The notes under the pieces were generated by a model. It ran no database searches. It was not told the DNA's origin and saw only the letters and a program-made list of their open reading frames with translations. Made by a program: the position numbers and the translations under genes. Positions 35,293 through 58,800 of a stretch of 64,000 nt of DNA are shown here, in pieces. The number at the start of each line of letters is the position of its first letter. Within the stretch, counting starts at the first letter, position 1. Source of the stretch: Lytechinus pictus (Eukaryota); assembly GCF_037042905.1 (NCBI RefSeq), contig NC_087248.1, forward strand, positions 3,782,001 through 3,846,000, read 5' to 3'.

Positions 35293-38200
35293 TTTGACGG
35301 AATGAAGTGTATGTGCTATTAGCAGGCCTATTATTTGCATAATGCCCAACTCAAATCAAATAAAATATTCAACGAATGAATAAAATAAAAATTGTAGAGC
35401 CTTGGACAGTAGTGTATTTTGACATGATGAGGGCAATGGTAAGGTAAAGTAAGGTCATTTTATTTTCAGAATAAAAAAGGTAGATTGTTACACGTCCTAT
35501 TTATTGCTTTCCCTTCCGAGCCTTTCTTACTGTCCTTGTTCCCCCTTCCCCCCTCACTAATAAAATCTTAAGGTGTGTGGTAGCCGCATGAAGTAAGACA
35601 TTTACATCAAAATAAAACGGGCAATTGTATACTTCATACAACAAACTGTTCTTATAATTAATACCTACTGAGTTGGGAGTCCCGATTTTTGTTTAAATAT
35701 ATTTCTTAATCAATAATTACAATCGCCACCAAATAAATAAAACAAAACAAAAATAGAAAACATAAATGTGGGTCGCTCAGCCAACTTCTTGAAAACGAAA
35801 CTGATGTTGAACCCATAACTTTAGTAGGCCTACATACCCCAACTTGAACTATACAAAGGGTCACTTCCTGGTCATTCTGCCTTGTTGACCATTCGATTTC
35901 TGACCCTGAGGCGATGTCACCTATTGTCGTCATCGCCGTTAATTAATTTTTGTTTATTTTCTCAACGGACACTCGATCTCGCATTCGACCACAGCCTCGA
36001 GGGTCTTCCGGGGTTGGGGTTCATCATGGAAGTCCAGTTTGGCTTCGAGGAGGGAAGTGATTATCGACGGAATTCGGAAGAGCAAGTCGAAACTTGTCGC
36101 AGTTTTCTATACCTTCTTTCTTTTTTATGTTCTATTTATATTGTTATTACATATAAGTTGTGATGAATAAAATAGACAAATCGATTTAACCCACGACCTA
36201 TTTTATAAGAACACTCGATGCTGGGAAGAAGAATCTGGAGTGTTTTGAAAATTGATGAAAACGTGACACGGCCTACTTTCATTATGATCTTTCATGGCGC
36301 CTACACTTTAAATTGGCCATGTTACTGTGTCATTGTCAGCGGAACGATAGCTCAATACTGATTCTGGAATTATTATAATTTTCCCTTAATATTTGCTTCT
36401 TATTCACCTCAAGCCTCTCAGTTTTGTACAGATCACTATTTTGCACTATTGGATCTGCCCTCTTTAGATTAAACATAGTTATGTATAATCACTCTTGTTT
36501 GCTCTTGGTGCCATGAGCCTAATTACACCAGGAGGGCTTAAGATATTCGTTCGACCCAACCCATTCGATTTTTTTCAATTTGATATTGCTGATTGACAAA
36601 AGTGTATGAATATGGTTCAAAATCTAACACTGATTTTAGAAATGGTAACTACTGAACTTCCTTTGCCCAAATTGGGAAGATATATCAATGATTTGGAACT
36701 ATTTTTTGACTGGCGAAAGAATTTGGGCTATTTTACTGTTTCAGTTGATGAATTTGATTCCATCATAGTTATCTTCATAAATGGCGATTTATTTTTAAAA
36801 TGAGCTTGCTACGATACCCTTCTCTGGTCAGATATGGAATGTCAGATATATATCCTATCCAAAGGTAGTAACATTTGACCCTCTAATTTCACATTTATTT
36901 TTTATGAATTTTTCTTAAGTGCCATTTTAACACACAAGTCTATGGGGAATGTTTTACGCGGTGACACCTCTTATCCCACATTGTTTCATATAATTCTGAG
37001 GACACATTGGCCTAGAATATTTGATAATCATTTTCTACCACTCTGCTGGCTGGATTTAGTATTTCTTATTATCAAGCTTAAATTGGCCGTCACAATGTAT
37101 TACATAGAGTAAATATAATATTGAAATATATCCTTCTGATTTTCTTTCGGTAGTTGTCCCCAATGGCCTCCAGATATTAATATCTACGATTGTTAATCCT
37201 CTATACGCTTTTTATCTTAACTCTAATTTATCTTGTTTATTTCTTGTTATTATTAATGATCCATAGAATGCTGCAAATGTTTTTATTTTATATGATAAAA
37301 ACAATATGAATGCATTTCAGTTACCATGGCAGTGACAGTTTTCAGTAGCCGCTTTGTAGAGGACAGTGTGCTCGTTTAGATATTAAACCCCCTTAATTCT
37401 GTCTTTCTTTTATAATGTAAATACTCTTCGGTCAAATATGTAGAAATGTCTGATTTGAGGGTGAAAATATTTGTCCTTTTCTTTGAAAGGCATTTGTGTT
37501 TAAATTCTACAGGTCTCTTAACAGAAATGTACAAGTGGGCGTAGGAATATTGACCTCTTATATCCATATTTGTTTTTCACGGACGTCTCGTCAAAGAGCG
37601 AGGATATTTCTTTTTCTCTTCAAAAATATTAGTACGTCCTACTTATTTAAAAGTAAAATCACCACATGAAAGGAGCGAAGGGTGACAACACAATGAATAT
37701 TCGATTTACAATAATAACCCTTAATAGTTTAAATCGTGATTCGAGCTTTCATACAATCCAGCATCTTCAAAATGTATATGACAGATGGGAAATTAATGGT
37801 CACTCCTCATTGCATTTTGACTGGTAATTTTTGAGTTCTAAAACTGATTCTTATCCATGCTTCAAAACTTTTAACCAGACAGTCTAAGCTGAAATGATCA
37901 ACTATTTGAAGTCGATATTATTTTTTCAATATATGGTTACACTCGAAACGGCACTCTTCATATATGTTCACAGATTTCTTGAAAGCGTTTACGATTACAT
38001 ATTAAACATAAAACTGTAAACAATCGAAAAGGAATACCTTATTAGGCAAATTTTATTCCGAATAATATTGACAATGAGTTTGTCGTATTCTACTTGAGGT
38101 GATATTACAAGTATATTCCGAAAATACAATATTTCACAGAATAATAATATAAGAGCGAAATTGTATGATTGAAAACAATCAGTCATATAAATTAATCATT

Positions 38201-38742
38201 AAAACAAAATAAAAACTGACTACTCAAAAGTTTCCAGTGAAAGGTATAAAATAATATATTGTTATGTTACCTTGATATAGTCTGTAATAAATAATACAGA
38301 AGGATCTTTCATATTACATTGTATAATCAGATGTCATCAGAAACGAAAATAGACATACATAGTTTACTTGTCTCCTGGCAGAAATCATAAGTAACTATAA
38401 TTGAATAGATAGGTAACTGTGATCAATCAAATAGTATTAGTGACTTTCTGCCAAATTATTCATAAATATGCCCGGATTCCATTTTAAAATGTTAATATTC
38501 GTTCTAGTTCCGGATTCTTAGAGCCCAATCCCCACGTTGTGACTTTCATGAAACTGAGTTGTGATATTTTATAGTCAATTTATCAATAAAAGAAAAGTTA
38601 TTTAGGATCGCCACGTAACCCTAGGTGGATACTAAGAACCAGAGTTAAACCGTAAAACGTCAAAATGTCTCCAGTTTGTCCAATTTCCTGGTAAGATCTT
38701 CCCAATGTTGTACCCCAGTGCGCATGCGTCCCTCGGGTAAAG

Positions 38743-41325
38743 TTACAATGTTGTTGGGAGACACCGGGAGTTACAATCATCGCAATCAGAACCTAGAGCA
38801 CAAAGGCTTGGTGTCACAGAACCTTGTCCTCCATCTTCACATATCTCATTCCTTCGGTTGTAACACAGGTTAGAGCACTTGATCTCTATCGGAAAAAATA
38901 TGAAAACAGAGAAATAAATGATAAATAATCCGAAGAGAAGAGAGAGGATGTGGATTATTCCTTAAAAATCTTAGGCATTCTCTATACTCCAACCTGGAAT
39001 ATGGGGAACGACATCATTCGCGAAATCGGGCCCTTTTCCTACTTTTAATCCCACAAATCATGGAGAAATGTAATTTTGACTGTATTCAATTTTGCGTGCT
39101 TTGACCTATTTCTTACCATGCAAGTGGTGATCAGCTAGTGTCCCTCTCACTATAGATACACAACTAGTCCCCTCCTTTCGAAAATATAATATTTCATTGA
39201 TTGGAAGGCCTACATCATTGGCTTACAAATGGGGGCGACTAGTGGATACTATTTCCCTGTAGAAATTACATGTCCGAGGAAAAAAAAAGAGGAAAAGGGG
39301 AAAATGACAGGAAAAGGGTTAATGTTATATCATATTTTGGATATGTCAAAATTTGCCTCTAAATTAGATTTTATTTCAAAGGAGTAGTTTGCTCACTTGC
39401 TTAGCTCTGTCTTGTAATAAAACCGCGTATCATGTCACCTTGAATATTTTATCCATGATTCCTCTGGCCTACGTAGTATCAATACACGGCTTAAGAAGAC
39501 ACAATGGAAGGCAAATAGGATGGATGATTGCGATAAGGATCGATCTGGGCAAGCTTACCCTTTTGTAAATTAAGGAATAATCATGCAGAGGTCAACTTAG
39601 TCTTATAACCTACCTTCTTCCCTGCCTTCCATTGTGCATTCGAAAGCCGCACTCATAACAATGTCGTACATAAAATCAAGACACTATAGGGGTGTTTCAC
39701 AAAGATTTTAAAAATGATTTTTTTTTTAAAGCAAGATTGGTAAGTGTGTTTAGGGGACGCGACCGGGACGCGAGATACAGCGGGATCATCAAGTGAAATT
39801 TGTATCAAATTCCACGTTTGAGTTCGTGCTTCAGAAATGACTAAAAAAAAACACTTGCCCTTCAGTCCTCCCAAGCTATCTAGATAAGATATGAAAGTAG
39901 AGCCTACAAAAAGTCACCTGAATATTGATTTGCATCGTAAATAAACCTTTATTCTACATTCCACGACTTTTTTTTTCATGAATTATTCAAAACCTCAGTG
40001 TCAGACTCACACCAAGGTACGGTCGAAGAGACCATACCCTGCGACCGATCGGACGTGCTTTCACACCGACGTCAAAATTGGTCAGGCCCAGAGCGGTCGG
40101 TCGCTGTACAGCTGACCTAGCCGAAGGCGGAAGTAGAGCGCGTGGGCGTGTATGGGGGGGGGGGGGGTCATTGCATTTCAATCGGTCGCTGAGTACGATG
40201 TGCTTTCACATCAAGCTTGCATCGGTCGCGATCAATCGCTGAAGACCTCTTATGTCGGACTCTGCGACCGATCATCTTGGTAAAAACGATTGGTCGCTGA
40301 GTACGATGAAATGCATGCTTTCACACCATGGTTTCATCGGTCGCTGGGTAGGCCCTACGGTCTGCGACCGGACCTTTGTGTGAAAGCAACATCCAAACAC
40401 CCATCTTATGTCTGTAAGATTGTAACTTACCGTTAGTTGTACTGTTACATGTGTGACACACGTTGCCTTCCCACTGATCTTTGCATTCACATGTAAAGTC
40501 TATGATAGCCGAGATTCCATTACCCACACGTCGGTCGATACATTCTCCACCATGATGGCAAGGACTGGAGCTGTAAAGAGGTAAAGAGGGTGTAAAAATT
40601 TAGATGATGATCATCATCATCAACATGATTACGGTTATCCTCGTCACCATCATTATTAACATCATCATTATAATCATAACCATCATGCATCATCATCATC
40701 ATGATACTCATCAAAATCATCATTATCATTATGATCATAATTGTCATTGTAAAGTCATAATCGTCACCATAGTCATCATTGTCATCCATCATCGTCATCA
40801 TCATTACCATCAGCAACAGACGCATCATTATCATTATCATATTATTATCACCATCAATATCATCAACATCGTCGCCCTCATCAACATCATCATTATCAAC
40901 ATCACCGTCATTATCATCATAATCACTACCATCACCATCATCATCACCAACCTCAAAATCATTATAATCATCATTTTCACCACCACCACCACAACCACCA
41001 CCACCATCAACATGNNNNNNNNNNNNNNNNNNNNNNNNNNNNNNNNNNNNNNNNNNNNNNNNNNNNNNNNNNNNNNNNNNNNNNNNNNNNNNNNNNNNNN
41101 NNNNNNNNNNNNNNNNNNNNNNNNNNNNNNNNNNNNNNNNNNTATTTTTTACCTGCAGGAACACTCTCTGAATGGTGGTTGAGGCGCTGGTGTATGTGTT
41201 TTTGTTAGCAGAGCTGACCGTATGGTTGACTGACTCTGGACTTCATTGACCCCTCCACCGATCAGGAGAACGAAGACACAGACCACAATGCCGACAGTGA
41301 TGGTATTAGCCAAACGGATATCCAT
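38743..41325 (-). CDS. Small secreted protein, 151 aa: signal peptide + EGF domain + Cys-rich CEDGG/GSDCDDC module; complement(join(38743..38885,40431..40570,41153..41325))
   Basis: Phases match: TGC AG|gtaaaa...tttacag|C TCC and AAC G|gtaagt...ccgatag|AG ATC. Hydrophobic leader TVGIVVCVFVLLIGGG. EGF domain CSSSPCHHGGECI...FTCECKDQWEGNVC. Last exon IKCSNLCYNRRNEICEDGGQGSVTPSLCALGSDCDDCNSRCLPTTL*. Confidence 0.85.
40004..40388. mobile_element. MITE with degenerate TIRs and internal gctttcacac / tcggtcgc repeats, in an intron of the EGF gene
   Basis: The left end tcacaccaaggtacggtcg resembles the reverse complement of the right end cgaccggacctttgtgtgaaagc. Confidence 0.65.
40603..41014. repeat. 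Degenerate (ATC/ACC)n microsatellite, intronic, followed by gap 41015-41142
   Basis: Seen directly in the sequence. Confidence 0.9.
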
Positions 41326-42075
41326 TTTTCTTGACGTTCTGCACACATGAATAATTTTGAAATGTAAGAAATGTTATTTTATCCTATATCTTATATTATT
41401 CAGGCATACGCGATAATGTAATTATTCTTTGTGCCTTTCTTTCTCTTGATGTGTTGTTTATCTATTTGTCTGTCTCTTTGATGTCGGTTTCCCCGTCTCT
41501 CTTTCTATGTCTTTCTACCATTTTCAATTATCATGTCGCGCATATTCATTTTTTTTAAATGCCAGTGGATTTATATTAATTTATCAACATATCAAACTTT
41601 TCATGTTGTAAGAGGGCAGCAAATAACCTGATCAATTGTGACAACATGCATGGACATGGGGAAAAACATAATCATTGTGTCTGGTTAAATTTGAGACAAG
41701 AAATAGTGTTAAATTTGTATATATGACAACAATATAAATTATATGCACCATTTGAGCTGCAACAAAATTCACTTACGACAAACAAACAAGGATGAAAATT
41801 TTTGTCTGATTTGGTAAAATCTATATTAAACACATTTAATCATCAAAAAGACGGAATATAGTTTATTTTACTAAATTCAAAATGCTTTGATTTATGATAC
41901 AAATAGGCCTAGCTTTTCTCGATTTTTATCAATGTCAGCACCGCTATAATATTTTGATGACATCTAATTAAAGAACCAAACGATAGGACAAAATATATGC
42001 CAGTGCCATTTGTAAATAATTCAACTCCTTTAAATTTAAGCATGCCCAATACTAGTGATGGTACATTTTACTTAC

Positions 42076-42182
42076 CGAGCTGAATGGTATCCAAGTTTGT
42101 AAATGAGAAAACAGAAGCATTAAATCGTTTATTCGCCTCGTGTTACCACCGTAGACTTTCGATGCTTCAGACTCGCTTTATA
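42076..42182 (-). promoter_or_regulatory. TATA box and 5' non-coding exon of the EGF-domain gene
   Basis: TATAAA on the minus strand at 42177-42182 and a donor gctcg|gtaagt at 42076/42075. The downstream acceptor tgtgcag| puts the next exon start at 41338, 13 nt before the ATG. Confidence 0.6.
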
Positions 42183-55258: not shown

Positions 55259-55818
55259 GTAGTGCTTCCCATAGTTCTGCTGAACTATTTTGGCTCTACT
55301 CAATGGGGATAACAATAAAATGTCAGAAATTTTTGAATAAATCCCCAGAACGACAGTTATTCCTGTCTATGTGCACAGTTGCGTTTAGATCTATGCAGTC
55401 AAGTAAAAAAATTCATAGCATCCCTGGCTCGGCCCCATCCTGGAGCCTGCCCAGTGCCTTTGACACCAGCAATTTGCAAGCTGGTAATGAAAATTTGTTG
55501 GGCGGGGCGAGGATGCACTGCATTCACTAGAGTTGATCTTTCACTATTCAGGGTAGTTTCATTGTAAATTATAAAGAACTCTCGCTTGATGAATCACCCA
55601 TAACAAAATTACATGCTGTGTTTTTTTTATTCTTTTTTTTTTTTGGGGGGGGGGGGGGGGGTAGTTTGTTTGCTTCTCTTAAGCATTTTTACAGAATAGT
55701 GATATCATTTTTTTGCTTGACAATTTATACATTACTCATGTTGAATTGTATTATACAGGGCATATGGATCAGATGGTAGAGTTCGCGAGGTCACTTTAGA
55801 GGTCATTTAAGGGTCACC

Positions 55819-58800
55819 ATGGACACCAGGCCATCTAGTGTCTTACATCATGCAAGGAGAAGAGAGATTAGGGTAAGTGATGGGAGTATATCCTCCGTGG
55901 GCTGGTGAAACCTTGTATCAAAATTTGAAAACTCTATAGTACAGTTCAAAAATAGCTTTCTTTTGTAATAGAGTTATCACATACAATGTAAGTGGCAACT
56001 TTCATTATCCTAGAATAAGTTCGGAGTAGGAAGCTGTTTTCTGACAATATAGTAGGCCTACTGAGATACTGGGCTTTCTGTATGAGATGTCCACACTTTT
56101 AGGAGATTATGAGATGCATGGCTTTGATAATGCAATCAGTGCAATCAAGCATACATACTGTTCGATCAATGGCTGAGCTTTGTGTTACTTGCCCCGGAGC
56201 ATTGACAAGTTGTCACTGCGGAATTTATTATTATGGGCAACATAGAATGAAAACAGTACGGTAATTTACATAAACAAACATAAAACAAGATATAATAATT
56301 ATGTACATATCACATGATTCGATTCTATTCATAACAAAATTCATAGTAAAGTACTAGTAATGAGAGGGGGAAAGGAGGGGGTATGCTATCTTGTGGTTTA
56401 ACTTAAGTTCTTCTGATTTTAATCATGTATATGAGAAGTGCATCATTTTAAACATTTTGGTTTACAAGTGTTGTTTAAAGGGATCGTTTAACTTTGTGAG
56501 CAGCTGATTAAAAAAATTCTCAAACTGAGTTGAAACGTGCATATGAGTGCCTGTATTTGTCCTCAAAAACCCTGAAACAGACCACAATATGGGATGAAAA
56601 ACTCTAATTTCGATACAAGTAGCAATTTATTAGCCTGATTTTGAGAACCGTCTAGTAGACGGGTTCGGCTTATGACCAGTTTTCTCCAATTCAAAAAGTC
56701 AGTTGGCTATTTTGACTGCCTTCTGTTGTGTGTATCTCCTATACACACACTATTAGCTGCACTGTACATTCAGAGTATACCTTGTACACACTGTATGTAG
56801 GTCATGCTGTGTTCATCTAGAATTAATGTGTTGTGGTGCACAGATTCCCTGTATACACATACACCTGTAGTCATTGAAACCAACTCCCAATTATTTCAAA
56901 CTTTGGTTTATTACATCTCCAAGGTTTTAAAATTGATCCTGTAAATATAATACTTTGAAACTTTTGGGATGGTATTTTTACACTATAAGCCTAATGTTTA
57001 GCCCATTTTCAGGAAGTAAAAGGAGAATTTTTTAAATCAGAACAAAGTGAAATGATCACTTTAAGGAACACCTTAAATGTACAAGATTAGTTGGATTTAT
57101 AGTATTTAATGAAAAAAATCTTAATTTTGAATTTTATTAGTTTTCGTCGTAATAAAAAAATAAGAACAAGATTTTTTCACAGACCACATTCTCAACAGTG
57201 GACATGAGCATTCATTATTAAAAAAAAAAGATATTGTAGTGAGATGCCAAGTAGTAGAGCGGATTAGCCGAACAATTGTGCAAATTATGACTAAAGCATG
57301 AAACTTTCACAAGTATTAGTATATGCCGTAAGATTTATTTTAAAGATGGGAGGTAAATTTATAAATGCCATTTTCGGCCGTTGCCATGGCAACGGATTAA
57401 TTTCTCAAAAATAACATACATTCCCATGTAAATGGTAAATAAACATGATATAGATGACCAAAATGATAATTTTCAGGCTTTCAATTGAATACATATGAAA
57501 TTTAGAAATATTCAAGATCACCAAGATAGTTCCAATTGGTCCGTTGCCATGGCAACGGCTTGTTTTTCCCCAGGAAAATGAAATTTTTGATTAAAAAAAC
57601 GTTGTAGAATATGATTTATCTCTAATTTCCCCTAATTTTATAGTGTTAAACAAAGATATTTTGGTTGCTAAATATATCAATTACATCTCAAGCCATTGCC
57701 ATGGCAACCCAATAACATCTAATTTACAAAAATAACATGGTTGACAAGACAATGGACAGGTGGAAAATACAATAAGAATTGACTTGATCTGTATGCTTAA
57801 GTTTTACCCCTCTCATTTGAACAAAAAATACAGAAAGTGTTCTGCAGGAGTTCTTAAAAAGATAAAAAATTATGTTGCCTTGGTAATGCTTGAATTAAAC
57901 TTAAAAAAAACAATATTGCAAAGTGCCCGTTGCCATGGCAACAGCTTATTTCCCTCTAGAAAGGTAAAAATACTGATAAAATGTAGAATACATGTATGAT
58001 CATCATTCCACTTTCAATAATTTAAAGGTACTAATCGAGATATGTTTGTGACTAAATTTATAAATATAACATCTTAAGCCATTGCCATGGCAACCAGATA
58101 ACATCTAATTAAAAAAAAACCATGGATGACAAGGTTATGGACAGGTGAAAAATACAATGAAAATTCACTTAATGTACATGCATAAGGTTTGACCTACTCA
58201 ATCAATTTAGGGGAAATAATACAGTGAGTGATCTGCATGAACTAATTAGAATGATAAACGTTTATGTTGCCTTGGTAATACTTGAATTCAACGATAAATA
58301 TCAATGTTGCAAATGACCGGTTGCCATAGCAACGGCTCATTTACCCAAGAAAGTACCAGTTTTTATTAGAAAAAGGACTGTAGAATCTGATTTTTCTTGC
58401 ATTTCCCCTAATCTTAGTGTGCTGAACATAGAAATGTTTGATGCAAAATGTATAAATAACATCTGAAGCTATTGCCATGGCAACCAAATAATATCTAATT
58501 TACAAAAAATAATAATTTGGATGACAAGATTATGGACAGGTGGAAAATACAATTACAAATATCTCAATGTGCGAAAGGTTTGGCCAGTCATCTAATTTTG
58601 AACAAAAAAATCACTAAGTATTCTGGATGAGTTCATTAGAATAATAGATTGATGTTGCCTTGGTAATACTTGAATTTATTAATAAATATTAGTGTTTCAA
58701 ATGTCCCGTTGCCATGGCAACAGCTCATTTTCCCCAGAAAAGTATCAGCAGCTTTGATAAACAAAAACATTGTAAAATCTGATTTTTCTTTCATTTCCCC

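What the first reader, a model, noticed from the sequence alone, without database searches (positions are those of the whole stretch)
38743..41325. Small secreted protein joining an EGF domain to an unusual CEDGG..GxDCxDC cysteine module
Seen: an intact spliced gene with a TATA box, a 5' UTR exon, a signal peptide (likely cut VQS|Q), a Pro/Thr stalk and one EGF domain. Its terminal phase-1 exon encodes C-SNL-C-x7-C-EDGG-QGS-x5-C-ALGSD-C-DD-C-NSR-C. That exon's frame is missing from the ORF track. Recalled, not verified: a motif like CxNxCx7CDDGGxGSx4-5CxxGTDCxDCGxR is common in haptophyte/algal and myxobacterial proteins, and I know no characterised animal family with it. Inference: an undescribed ~120-aa secreted ligand or defence/adhesion peptide. 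The acidic, possibly Ca2+-binding module may have arrived by exon shuffling or ancient horizontal transfer.
Basis: partly seen in the sequence, partly recalled or inferred. Interest (0 to 1): 0.75.

Follow-up and report, generated by a model that had tools for sequence, protein, structure and literature searches.

The report
Sea-urchin EGF protein with unnamed cysteine module
This is a real, expressed and conserved sea-urchin gene for a small exported protein that joins one EGF domain to a 40-residue acidic six-cysteine module; the module belongs to a large family found in marine bacteria, haptophyte algae, giant-virus bins and acorn worms that none of the domain or structure libraries searched here holds.

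Summary
RNA contigs and stranded reads show both junctions. The assembly gap lies inside an intron and does not touch the reading frame.

The 151-aa product (about 120 aa once the leader is removed) is identical to the RefSeq protein "jagged-1-like" of Lytechinus pictus. So the gene is already predicted, but misnamed. Orthologues with the same exon phases exist in L. variegatus, S. purpuratus, Pseudocentrotus and Diadema. dN/dS between the two Lytechinus species is about 0.1.

The last exon has no match in Pfam, NCBIfam, PDB or Swiss-Prot models. It is nonetheless one copy of a large repeat family, consensus C-x-N-T-C-x4-DG-x-CDDGGxGS-x4-C-x2-GTDCxDCGxR. I found the family in Myxococcota, Planctomycetota, haptophytes, giant-virus bins and hemichordates. 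In two hemichordate genes each module sits on its own phase 1-1 exon, which supports exon shuffling.

Membership of LNR or LDLa is not supported. Whether the module came by ancient transfer or by vertical descent is unresolved. Function is inferred only: an extracellular, probably Ca2+-stabilised, binding module. The gene is ordinary; the module family is the interesting part.

The parts
42176..42182 (-). TATAAAG motif upstream of the 5' UTR exon (candidate TATA box; transcription start not mapped)
   Evidence: Sequence read. RNA contigs extend 81-98 nt beyond the acceptor at 41339, that is to about 42157-42174.
42077..42157 (-). 5' UTR exon. The 3' end at 42077 is exact and followed by GTAAGT; the 5' end is approximate.
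   Evidence: The loose ends of contigs X1 and X18 at 41339 match window 42077-42104 uniquely.
41153..41339 (-). Exon 2: 14 nt of 5' UTR, ATG at 41325, the N-terminal hydrophobic leader, and the conserved motif SALLTK.HTPAP.PPFR. It ends in phase 2.
40571..41152 (-). Intron holding the assembly gap (41015-41142) and a (GAT/GGT)n low-complexity tract
   Evidence: The junction 40570/41153 is seen in 2 contigs and 3 reads.
40431..40570 (-). Exon 3: one EGF domain with two extra flanking cysteines and an N-glycosylation sequon (NST)
   Evidence: Pfam PF00008: E 5e-5 on the exon alone, 7.6e-6 and 26.5 bits on the whole protein.
38886..40430 (-). Intron 2, containing a dispersed repeat at about 40040-40400
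   Evidence: The junction 38885/40431 is seen in 2 contigs and 4 reads. Unrelated high-depth contig pieces lie at 40181-40350.
38743..38885 (-). Coding part of the last exon, entered in phase 1: the six-cysteine acidic module plus a seventh cysteine, then stop TAA at 38745-38743
   Evidence: AlphaFold2 model with pLDDT 92.3.
38037..38742 (-). 3' UTR of about 700 nt, with AATAAA at 38057-38052. The end is approximate.
   Evidence: Contig X18 runs 263 nt past 38300. Sequence read.

Best explanation
The locus is the Lytechinus pictus copy of a conserved, sea-urchin-wide gene for a small exported glycoprotein. The precursor is 151 aa. After leader removal it is about 120 aa, 13 kDa, pI about 5.4, with 15 cysteines.

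The protein has four parts:
1. An N-terminal hydrophobic leader.
2. A nearly invariant 17-residue linear motif, SALLTK.HTPAP.PPFR.
3. One EGF domain flanked by two extra cysteines.
4. One copy of a roughly 40-residue module with six invariant cysteines and invariant acidic and glycine positions (N/D4, D/N11, D/E15, D16, G17, G18, G29, D31, D34, R38), plus one extra cysteine specific to echinoids.

Shown:
- The gene is transcribed and spliced as modelled, and it is under purifying selection.
- The module belongs to a very large repeat family of extracellular proteins in Myxococcota, Planctomycetota, haptophytes, giant-virus bins and hemichordates.
- That family has no model in the Pfam or NCBIfam copies searched and no relative in the PDB.
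- In the two hemichordate genes examined each module occupies its own phase 1-1 exon. The echinoid gene therefore looks like an EGF exon joined to one such mobile exon.

Inferred:
- The module folds as a three-disulfide knot whose conserved Asp/Asn cluster binds Ca2+, in the manner of LDLa or LNR modules but without detectable kinship to them.
- It acts as an extracellular binding or adhesion unit.
- The conserved odd number of cysteines suggests either a disulfide tying the EGF to the module with one free thiol, or a covalent dimer.
For: Splicing and expression:
- Both junctions appear in two RNA contigs and in stranded raw reads. The first-mate strand fits a minus-strand RNA.

Identity and orthology:
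- The spliced product equals P0262, RefSeq XP_054752781.2.
- Orthologues are 55-97% identical in L. variegatus, Pseudocentrotus depressus, S. purpuratus and two Diadema species.
- Exon phases are identical (0, 2, 1) in four species.
- A WD40/TPR gene lies head-to-head upstream in Diadema and in L. variegatus.

Selection:
- dN/dS between L. pictus and L. variegatus is 0.107 overall and 0.073 in the part after the leader.
- Six of seven coding polymorphisms in the RNA data are synonymous by my codon reading.
- All 15 cysteines after the leader are invariant.

The module family:
- 297 hits at E<=1e-3, with up to 9 matched stretches per protein.
- 874 instances in 275 fetched proteins, 780 of them with all six cysteines.
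- At least 246 confirmed loci in bacterial genomes, mostly Myxococcota and Phycisphaerae.
- Named haptophyte and hemichordate proteins.
- Partner domains are extracellular: trypsin, subtilase, papain, leishmanolysin, LCCL, ShK, EGF and the MopE motif.

Absence of a known family:
- No Pfam or NCBIfam hit.
- No PDB sequence hit at E<=10 with a 136-sequence profile.

Structure and exon layout:
- The module model is confident (pLDDT 92.3).
- Its only structural matches are other members of the same family.
- One module per phase 1-1 exon in Ptychodera and Saccoglossus.
Against: - No direct evidence exists for secretion, Ca2+ binding, disulfide pattern, dimerisation or any biological role.
- The 19-residue hydrophobic N-terminus could be a signal anchor rather than a cleaved signal peptide.
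- The full-length model failed (pLDDT 38), so nothing is known about how the EGF packs against the module or how the three extra cysteines pair.
- The urchin module departs from the family consensus at three well-conserved positions: Gly36 is Asn, the 'DG' before the third cysteine is 'NE', and Asp15 is Glu.
- The tissue and stage of expression are unknown because the run labels are coded.
Confidence: 0.8

Rival explanations
1. The C-terminal module is only a divergent member of a known animal Ca2+-binding cysteine module (Notch LNR or LDL-receptor class A), so nothing about it is new.
For: Language-model feature search put clusters with partial PF00066 (23% of members) and PF00057 annotation among the nearest neighbours, at scores of 0.84 and 0.69. 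Those scores are below the tool's own trust level. One of 127 full-length family members has a Pfam LNR hit at 2.6e-5, and I did not locate it within the protein. The size, the six cysteines, the acidic cluster and the short helix all resemble those modules.
Against: None of 136 module instances hit PF00066 or PF00057 even at E<=10. The 136-sequence profile finds no PDB chain at E<=10, although LNR and LDLa structures are deposited there, a fact I state from general knowledge. Foldseek against PDB and against Swiss-Prot models, and VIA-align against 48,161 chains, return no LNR or LDLa match. The cysteine spacing C-x3-C-x7-C-x12-C-x5-C-x2-C differs from both families as I recall their consensus. 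No classic LNR pattern occurs in the family members.
Confidence: 0.1
2. The protein is not freely secreted. It is a type II membrane protein held at the cell surface by an uncleaved N-terminal signal anchor, and it displays the EGF and the module.
For: The hydrophobic stretch is 19 residues long with mean Kyte-Doolittle hydropathy 2.2-2.6 in four species, which is long for a signal-peptide core. The low-confidence full-length model shows a helix over residues 4-22. One hemichordate relative (P0011) is membrane-anchored, although at its C-terminus.
Against: A small-residue -3/-1 site (V-Q-S|Q) follows the hydrophobic stretch in Lytechinus and Pseudocentrotus, and comparable sites occur in S. 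purpuratus and Diadema. The N-terminal flank has only 3-8 residues and little positive charge. No signal-peptide predictor could be run here.
Confidence: 0.2
3. An ancestor of echinoderms and hemichordates acquired the module by horizontal transfer from a marine microbe, alga or giant virus. It is not an old animal domain that was lost elsewhere.
For: Named hits are confined to Ambulacraria among animals, and otherwise fall in haptophytes, Myxococcota, Planctomycetota and Bacteroidota. The module also occurs in giant-virus metagenome bins, which could act as a vector. A tree constraint that holds all animal modules as one clade is not rejected and scores better than the free search (p-AU 0.67). 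Taxon labels cluster on the tree more than in shuffles.
Against: Only 38 alignment columns were usable. The tree is unrooted and largely unresolved, with 67 of 105 forks open. Absence from other animals was not tested systematically: only named hits among the best-scoring 120-150 were inspected, and I could not run tBLASTn on animal genomes. A single origin is equally compatible with vertical descent and loss. The giant-virus bins may contain host contigs.
Confidence: 0.35
4. The cysteines bind a metal such as zinc, as in a zinc ribbon, instead of forming disulfides.
For: A few module instances give weak Pfam matches to zinc-ribbon or zinc-finger models: 10 of 136 to PF18445, 7 to zf-HYPF, best E 0.006. 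UniProt's automatic name for one family member is 'RING-type domain-containing protein'.
Against: All of those matches are below the curated cut-offs and stem from the C-x2-C spacing. Family members inspected carry signal peptides or lipoprotein-type leaders and extracellular partner domains. In that setting six invariant cysteines in 40 residues normally form disulfides, which is general knowledge. The invariant residues besides cysteine are Asp and Gly, not His.
Confidence: 0.04

Closest known systems
LDL-receptor class A module (Pfam PF00057) and Notch/LIN-12 repeat (PF00066)
   Same: All are extracellular modules of about 40 residues with six cysteines, little regular secondary structure and a conserved cluster of Asp/Asn residues. 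They are often tandemly repeated and, in animals, encoded on symmetric phase-1 exons. In LDLa and LNR the acidic cluster holds one Ca2+. This is the best working analogy for how the module operates.
   Different: No sequence, profile or fold match was found. The cysteine spacing and signature differ: CDDGGxGS and GTDCxDCGxR here, against DCxDGSDE in LDLa or DGGDC in LNR as I recall them. The taxonomic range also differs, being mostly Myxococcota, Planctomycetota and haptophytes.
Putative metal-binding motif of MopE type (Pfam PF11617), common in Myxococcota
   Same: It is a short, acidic, cysteine-containing extracellular repeat. It occurs in the same bacterial proteins as this module.
   Different: It is a separate repeat at separate positions, for example P0193 residues 66-93 lying between module copies. 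It has its own consensus (DCDD...P.A.E.C.G.D.NCDG), and no module instance matches PF11617.
Jagged/Delta (DSL) ligands and fibropellins, the names RefSeq gives this gene family
   Same: They share one EGF-like domain of the same general type. The EGF has extra cysteines flanking the six canonical ones. Scan note s1-324872 describes a similar eight-cysteine pattern in sea-urchin EGF arrays, which I did not test.
   Different: This protein has 151 residues, one EGF, no DSL domain, no EGF array, no transmembrane segment after the EGF and no avidin-like end. The names come from best-hit transfer, not from membership.
Hemichordate multi-module proteins (Saccoglossus XP_006820193, XP_006813987, XP_006813079; Ptychodera XP_070549967, XP_070561372; Glandiceps XP_077984197)
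   Same: These are the nearest animal relatives of the module, at 37-51% identity. They carry signal peptides, and each module is on a phase-1 exon. The nearest non-echinoid neighbour on the tree is a Glandiceps module.
   Different: They carry 2-7 tandem modules and have no Pfam EGF hit. Some have a C-terminal membrane anchor or a Ly6/uPAR domain. All are uncharacterised.

Membership tests
EGF-like domain (Pfam PF00008) | HMM score above Pfam's gathering cut-off | tested here: met
   P0262 residues 57-93 score 26.5 bits against a cut-off of 21.5, E 7.6e-6. The exon alone gives E 5.4e-5.
EGF-like domain (Pfam PF00008) | Six cysteines spaced C-x4-C-x5-C-x(8-16)-C-x-C-x8-C | tested here: met
   C57, C62, C68, C85, C87 and C96 are invariant in nine echinoid sequences.
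   297 proteins at E<=1e-3 and 45 at E<=1e-10, with matches covering query residues 3-40. The window's own module scores 50.4 bits against the family HMM.
   All are present in the window's module. It deviates at three less strict positions: G36 is N, D11-G12 is N-E, and D15 is E.
Notch/LIN-12 repeat (Pfam PF00066) | Match to the Pfam HMM | tested here: not met
   No hit for the exon or for any of 136 module instances at E<=10.
Notch/LIN-12 repeat (Pfam PF00066) | Fold similarity to solved or predicted LNR structures | tested here: inconclusive
   No match in PDB (Foldseek or VIA-align) or in Swiss-Prot models. The tools warn that a missing match for a tiny domain does not show that the folds differ.
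LDL-receptor class A (Pfam PF00057) | Match to the Pfam HMM, including the DCxDGSDE calcium cage | tested here: not met
   No hit at E<=10 for 136 instances. The motif is absent from the sequence.
Jagged/DSL Notch ligands (the RefSeq name of this protein) | A DSL domain, an array of EGF repeats and a C-terminal transmembrane segment | tested here: not met
   The only Pfam hit is one EGF. The protein ends six residues after the module.
Fibropellins (the RefSeq name of the S. purpuratus orthologue) | Many tandem EGF repeats followed by an avidin-like domain (from general knowledge) | tested here: not met
   P0264 has 146 aa. Its only precomputed Pfam domain is one EGF (PF00008) and its sequence carries one C-terminal module. 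P0262 aligns with it over its whole length.
Calcium-binding disulfide-knot modules (functional class) | Bound Ca2+ coordinated by the conserved Asp/Asn residues, and three intramodule disulfides | not testable with these tools
   Model coordinates are not exposed. Only residue conservation and model confidence are available.

The most novel reading that the evidence does not exclude
The module is an undescribed extracellular Ca2+-binding domain superfamily of marine microbes. It entered the common ancestor of echinoderms and hemichordates by horizontal transfer, perhaps through a giant virus or an algal or bacterial associate. It acquired phase-1 introns, spread by exon shuffling, and in sea urchins fused to an EGF exon to make a lineage-specific signalling or matrix protein.
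Probability: 0.25. Interest if true: 0.65.

Novelty: new variant of a known kind. Interest (0 to 1): 0.45.

Why it matters
The gene itself is an ordinary small exported EGF protein, already predicted in RefSeq under misleading names. The value lies in the module.

The module family is large and sharply defined. It has at least hundreds of 50%-identity clusters and up to nine repeats per protein. It had no model in the Pfam copy (2025) or NCBIfam (2026) and no relative in the PDB or Swiss-Prot models. Its distribution is strikingly patchy: predatory and marine bacteria, haptophytes, giant-virus bins, and among animals, so far, only acorn worms and sea urchins.

This matters in three ways:
1. 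It gives domain curators a clean seed alignment.
2. It gives structural biologists a confident 40-residue target with a probable cation site.
3. It gives evolutionary biologists a testable case of domain gain at the base of Ambulacraria followed by exon shuffling.

It also corrects the 'jagged-1-like' and 'fibropellin-3' labels, which could mislead studies of Notch signalling in sea urchins.

Tried and rejected
1. Pfam and NCBIfam scans of the exon, of 136 module instances and of about 150 full-length relatives gave no family for the module. Only sub-threshold zinc-finger noise appeared.

2. The profile search of PDB sequences at E<=10 found nothing.

3. Fold searches of the confident module model were uninformative. 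PDB by Foldseek gave two spurious rows. VIA-align wide gave no Z>=2. Swiss-Prot models gave nothing. AFDB clusters and the ESM Atlas returned only members of the same family.

4. The full-length AlphaFold2 run with a nine-sequence orthologue alignment failed (pLDDT 38). It gives no information on interdomain packing or on pairing of the extra cysteines.

5. I tried to infer disulfide pairs from joint loss of cysteines across 874 instances. Too few variants exist.

6. Regular-expression searches for classic LNR patterns in family members found none. The one Pfam LNR hit among 127 members was not located.

7. Literature searches by motif strings, accession numbers, gene names and topic found nothing relevant.

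8. The first word-based protein search with the Diadema orthologue found only itself. Adding the window's own exons to the query alignment recovered the other echinoid orthologues.

9. PF26571, precomputed for three relatives, is not in the local Pfam copy. From the peptidase M15/VanY-like hits in the same region, I judge it to be the N-terminal enzyme domain and not the module.

10. Contamination or a recent transfer as the source of the exon is rejected. The exon has spliceosomal introns, conserved phases and conserved gene neighbours in several echinoid genomes, and it appears in spliced RNA.

11. A findings search by sequence was blank.
Full report
**Gene model and the assembly gap**

On the minus strand an ATG at 41325 opens an exon that ends at 41153 before GTAAAA, in phase 2. 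A second exon (40570-40431) lies between ...TTTACAG and GTAAGT. A third exon starts at 38885 after ...CCGATAG, is entered in phase 1, and runs to TAA at 38745-38743.

The gap at 41015-41142 lies inside the first of these introns. Laying public runs on 38300-41500 showed both junctions, 41153/40570 and 40431/38885. They appear in two assembled RNA contigs (X1, 815 nt; X18, 1274 nt) and in raw stranded RNA reads of X22 (3 and 4 reads). Coverage is confined to the exons, and first mates lie on the plus strand, as expected for a minus-strand RNA in a standard stranded library. The contigs pass straight from one exon to the next, so nothing coding is hidden in the gap and the frame is continuous.

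Both contigs also continue upstream of an acceptor at 41339. The continuing sequence maps uniquely to 42077-42104 and is followed by GTAAGT, which confirms a 5' UTR exon. A TATAAAG lies at 42182-42176. The transcription start was not mapped, so calling it a TATA box remains plausible but unproven.

The 3' UTR runs about 700 nt to an AATAAA at 38057-38052.

The exon-3 frame is absent from a mechanical ORF list only because that frame has no start codon until 24 residues before the stop.

**The product**

The spliced CDS is 456 nt and encodes 151 aa. It reads as follows:
- a hydrophobic leader, MDIRLANTITVGIVVCVFVLLIGGGVNEVQS|QS;
- a short linker;
- one EGF domain (Pfam PF00008, 26.5 bits against a cut-off of 21.5);
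- an N-S-T sequon;
- the 46-residue last-exon peptide.

Removing the leader leaves about 120 aa, 13 kDa, pI 5.45 and 15 cysteines.

I could not run a signal-peptide predictor. The hydrophobic core is 19 residues long, so a signal anchor remains a live alternative.

**The gene is already predicted and is conserved across sea urchins**

The word-based search with the Diadema relative alone found only itself. A query alignment that also included the window's own exons recovered more proteins:
- XP_054752781.2, 'protein jagged-1-like' of Lytechinus pictus, which is 100% identical to the window's product;
- two L. variegatus proteins;
- Pseudocentrotus depressus BAJ23055;
- S. purpuratus 'fibropellin-3' and 'fibropellin-3-like'.

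Two Diadema species had been found earlier. The window is therefore almost certainly L. pictus.

The names are transfers from the EGF domain. The protein has no DSL domain, no EGF array and no membrane segment after the EGF.

Exact spliced mapping shows the same three coding exons with phases 0, 2 and 1 in L. variegatus, S. purpuratus and Diadema antillarum. A WD40/TPR gene lies head-to-head upstream in Diadema and in L. variegatus. The window has one weak matching exon at 55813-55878.

dN/dS between the two Lytechinus species is 0.107 overall and 0.073 in the part after the leader. By my codon reading of the differences, six of seven coding variants in the RNA data are synonymous. The seventh is E28K, in the leader.

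In the nine-sequence alignment all 15 cysteines after the leader are invariant. So is the linker motif SALLTK.HTPAP.PPFR. The linker is therefore more than a loose Pro/Thr stalk.

Three cysteines are extra to the canonical domain sets: C55, two residues before the EGF; C99, three residues after it; and C146, after the module. An odd total that is conserved for this long suggests one interdomain disulfide plus either a free thiol or an intermolecular bond. This is inference only. The full-length model was too poor to help (pLDDT 38).

**The last-exon module**

The module has no Pfam or NCBIfam match. Searched with HMMER against 1.84 billion cluster representatives, the 46 residues gave 297 proteins at E<=1e-3 and 45 at E<=1e-10. 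Most of these hold several copies, up to nine matched stretches.

An HMM built from the hits finds 874 instances in the 275 proteins fetched. Of these, 780 have all six cysteines. The consensus is:

L-C-x-[ND]-T-C-x4-[DN]-G-x-C-[DE]-D-G-G-x-G-[SA]-x4-C-x2-G-[TS]-D-C-x-D-C-G-x-R

Conservation at the key positions is D16 99%, D31 99%, D34 99%, G17 and G29 96%, and R38 96%.

The urchin copy keeps every invariant position. It departs only at G36 (Asn), at the 'DG' before the third cysteine (Asn-Glu) and at D15 (Glu).

With a 136-sequence alignment AlphaFold2 gives a confident model: pLDDT 92.3, mostly irregular, with one short helix.

**Is it a known domain?**

- None of the 136 instances matches the LNR or LDLa models of Pfam even at E<=10. 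The only weak matches are zinc-finger models that share the C-x2-C spacing.
- The profile finds no PDB chain at E<=10.
- Foldseek against the PDB, VIA-align against 48,161 chains and Foldseek against Swiss-Prot models give nothing.
- AFDB clusters and the ESM Atlas return only other members of the same family, at 35-47% identity and TM 0.75-0.84. These sit in otherwise unrelated proteins from algae and bacteria.
- The language-model neighbour list hints at LNR and LDLa, but at scores below the tool's own trust level.

I conclude that the module works like those small Ca2+-caged disulfide modules. That reading is an analogy resting on size, six cysteines and a conserved Asp/Asn cluster. Membership in either family was tested and not met by sequence, and is inconclusive by fold.

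**Where the family lives**

- Named hits are hemichordates (Saccoglossus, Ptychodera, Glandiceps), haptophytes (Prymnesium, Chrysochromulina) and Myxococcota, Polyangiaceae and Alphaproteobacteria MAGs.
- A scan of one genome per bacterial species gave at least 246 confirmed loci. Most are Myxococcota (Polyangiales, Sandaracinaceae, Bradymonadia including the cultured Lujinxingia vulgaris) and Phycisphaerae, with some Bacteroidota.
- Fourteen loci came from IMG/VR, most of them in three giant-virus metagenome bins. One is a 932-aa AT-rich ORF with several modules.
- Partner domains are extracellular: trypsin, subtilase, papain, leishmanolysin, an M15-like peptidase, LCCL, ShK, collagen, the MopE-type motif (a separate repeat) and EGF.

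**Animals and exon shuffling**

Hemichordate proteins carry 2-7 modules behind a signal peptide. Some also have a membrane anchor or a Ly6/uPAR domain. Exact spliced mapping shows one module per exon, each exon entered and left in phase 1. This holds for four exons in Ptychodera and two in Saccoglossus. The echinoid module exon is entered in phase 1 at the equivalent place.

A maximum-likelihood tree was built from 108 labelled modules. Only 38 columns were usable and the tree is mostly unresolved. It places the four echinoid modules together (SH-aLRT 96), nearest to a Glandiceps module. Forcing all 32 animal modules into one clade is not rejected and scores better than the free search (p-AU 0.67).

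That result allows a single origin before echinoderms and hemichordates split. It cannot tell horizontal gain from vertical descent with losses. I also did not survey other animal genomes systematically.

**Verdict**

The gene is real and conserved but already predicted and misnamed. The module is genuine, widespread and absent from the libraries searched, and no literature search found a description. Exon shuffling is supported. Transfer and function remain open.

Noticed in passing
window 41190-41240 (protein residues 37-53): The linker between the leader and the EGF holds a motif, SALLTK.HTPAP.PPFR, that is invariant from Diadema to Lytechinus. It is more conserved than most of the EGF domain. 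It may be a processing, glycosylation or docking site rather than a spacer.
   Followed up: partly
window 40040-40400 (intron 2): A dispersed repeat with internal 'CGGTCGC/GCGACCG' inverted units. Unrelated contig pieces of high depth (29-83x) and reads on both strands land here. It therefore looks like a multi-copy element transcribed elsewhere, not part of this gene.
   Followed up: no
window 40600-41014: A long (GAT/GGT/GAC)n low-complexity tract fills intron 1 up to the assembly gap. It is the probable cause of the gap.
   Followed up: no
window 55813-55878 (+): A short exon-like match (E 3e-6) to the WD40/TPR gene that lies head-to-head upstream of the orthologue in Diadema and in L. variegatus. 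It suggests the gene neighbourhood is conserved.
   Followed up: partly
L087-L097 (IMG/VR giant-virus bins); L093:2414-5212: Three giant-virus metagenome bins carry several loci with the module. One is a 932-aa AT-rich ORF (identical at its start to P0085) with several modules separated by proline runs. It could be a vector for transfer, or it could be host contamination of the bins.
   Followed up: partly
P0182 (ENA metagenome contig of 22.9 kb): A 388-aa protein alternates calcium-binding-type EGF domains (FXa_inhibition, cEGF, EGF_CA) with this module four times. This is an independent EGF-plus-module combination in an unidentified organism.
   Followed up: no
window 41244 (codon 28): All six X22 RNA reads carry T instead of C on the plus strand, giving E28K in the leader. 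Six other coding differences seen in the RNA data are synonymous by my reading. Contig X1 also differs by small indels in the 3' UTR, so divergent alleles are circulating.
   Followed up: partly
RefSeq names of P0262, P0264, P0270: The automatic names 'protein jagged-1-like', 'fibropellin-3' and 'fibropellin-3-like' are attached to proteins of 146-151 aa with one EGF and no DSL or avidin-like domain. The names are misleading.
   Followed up: yes
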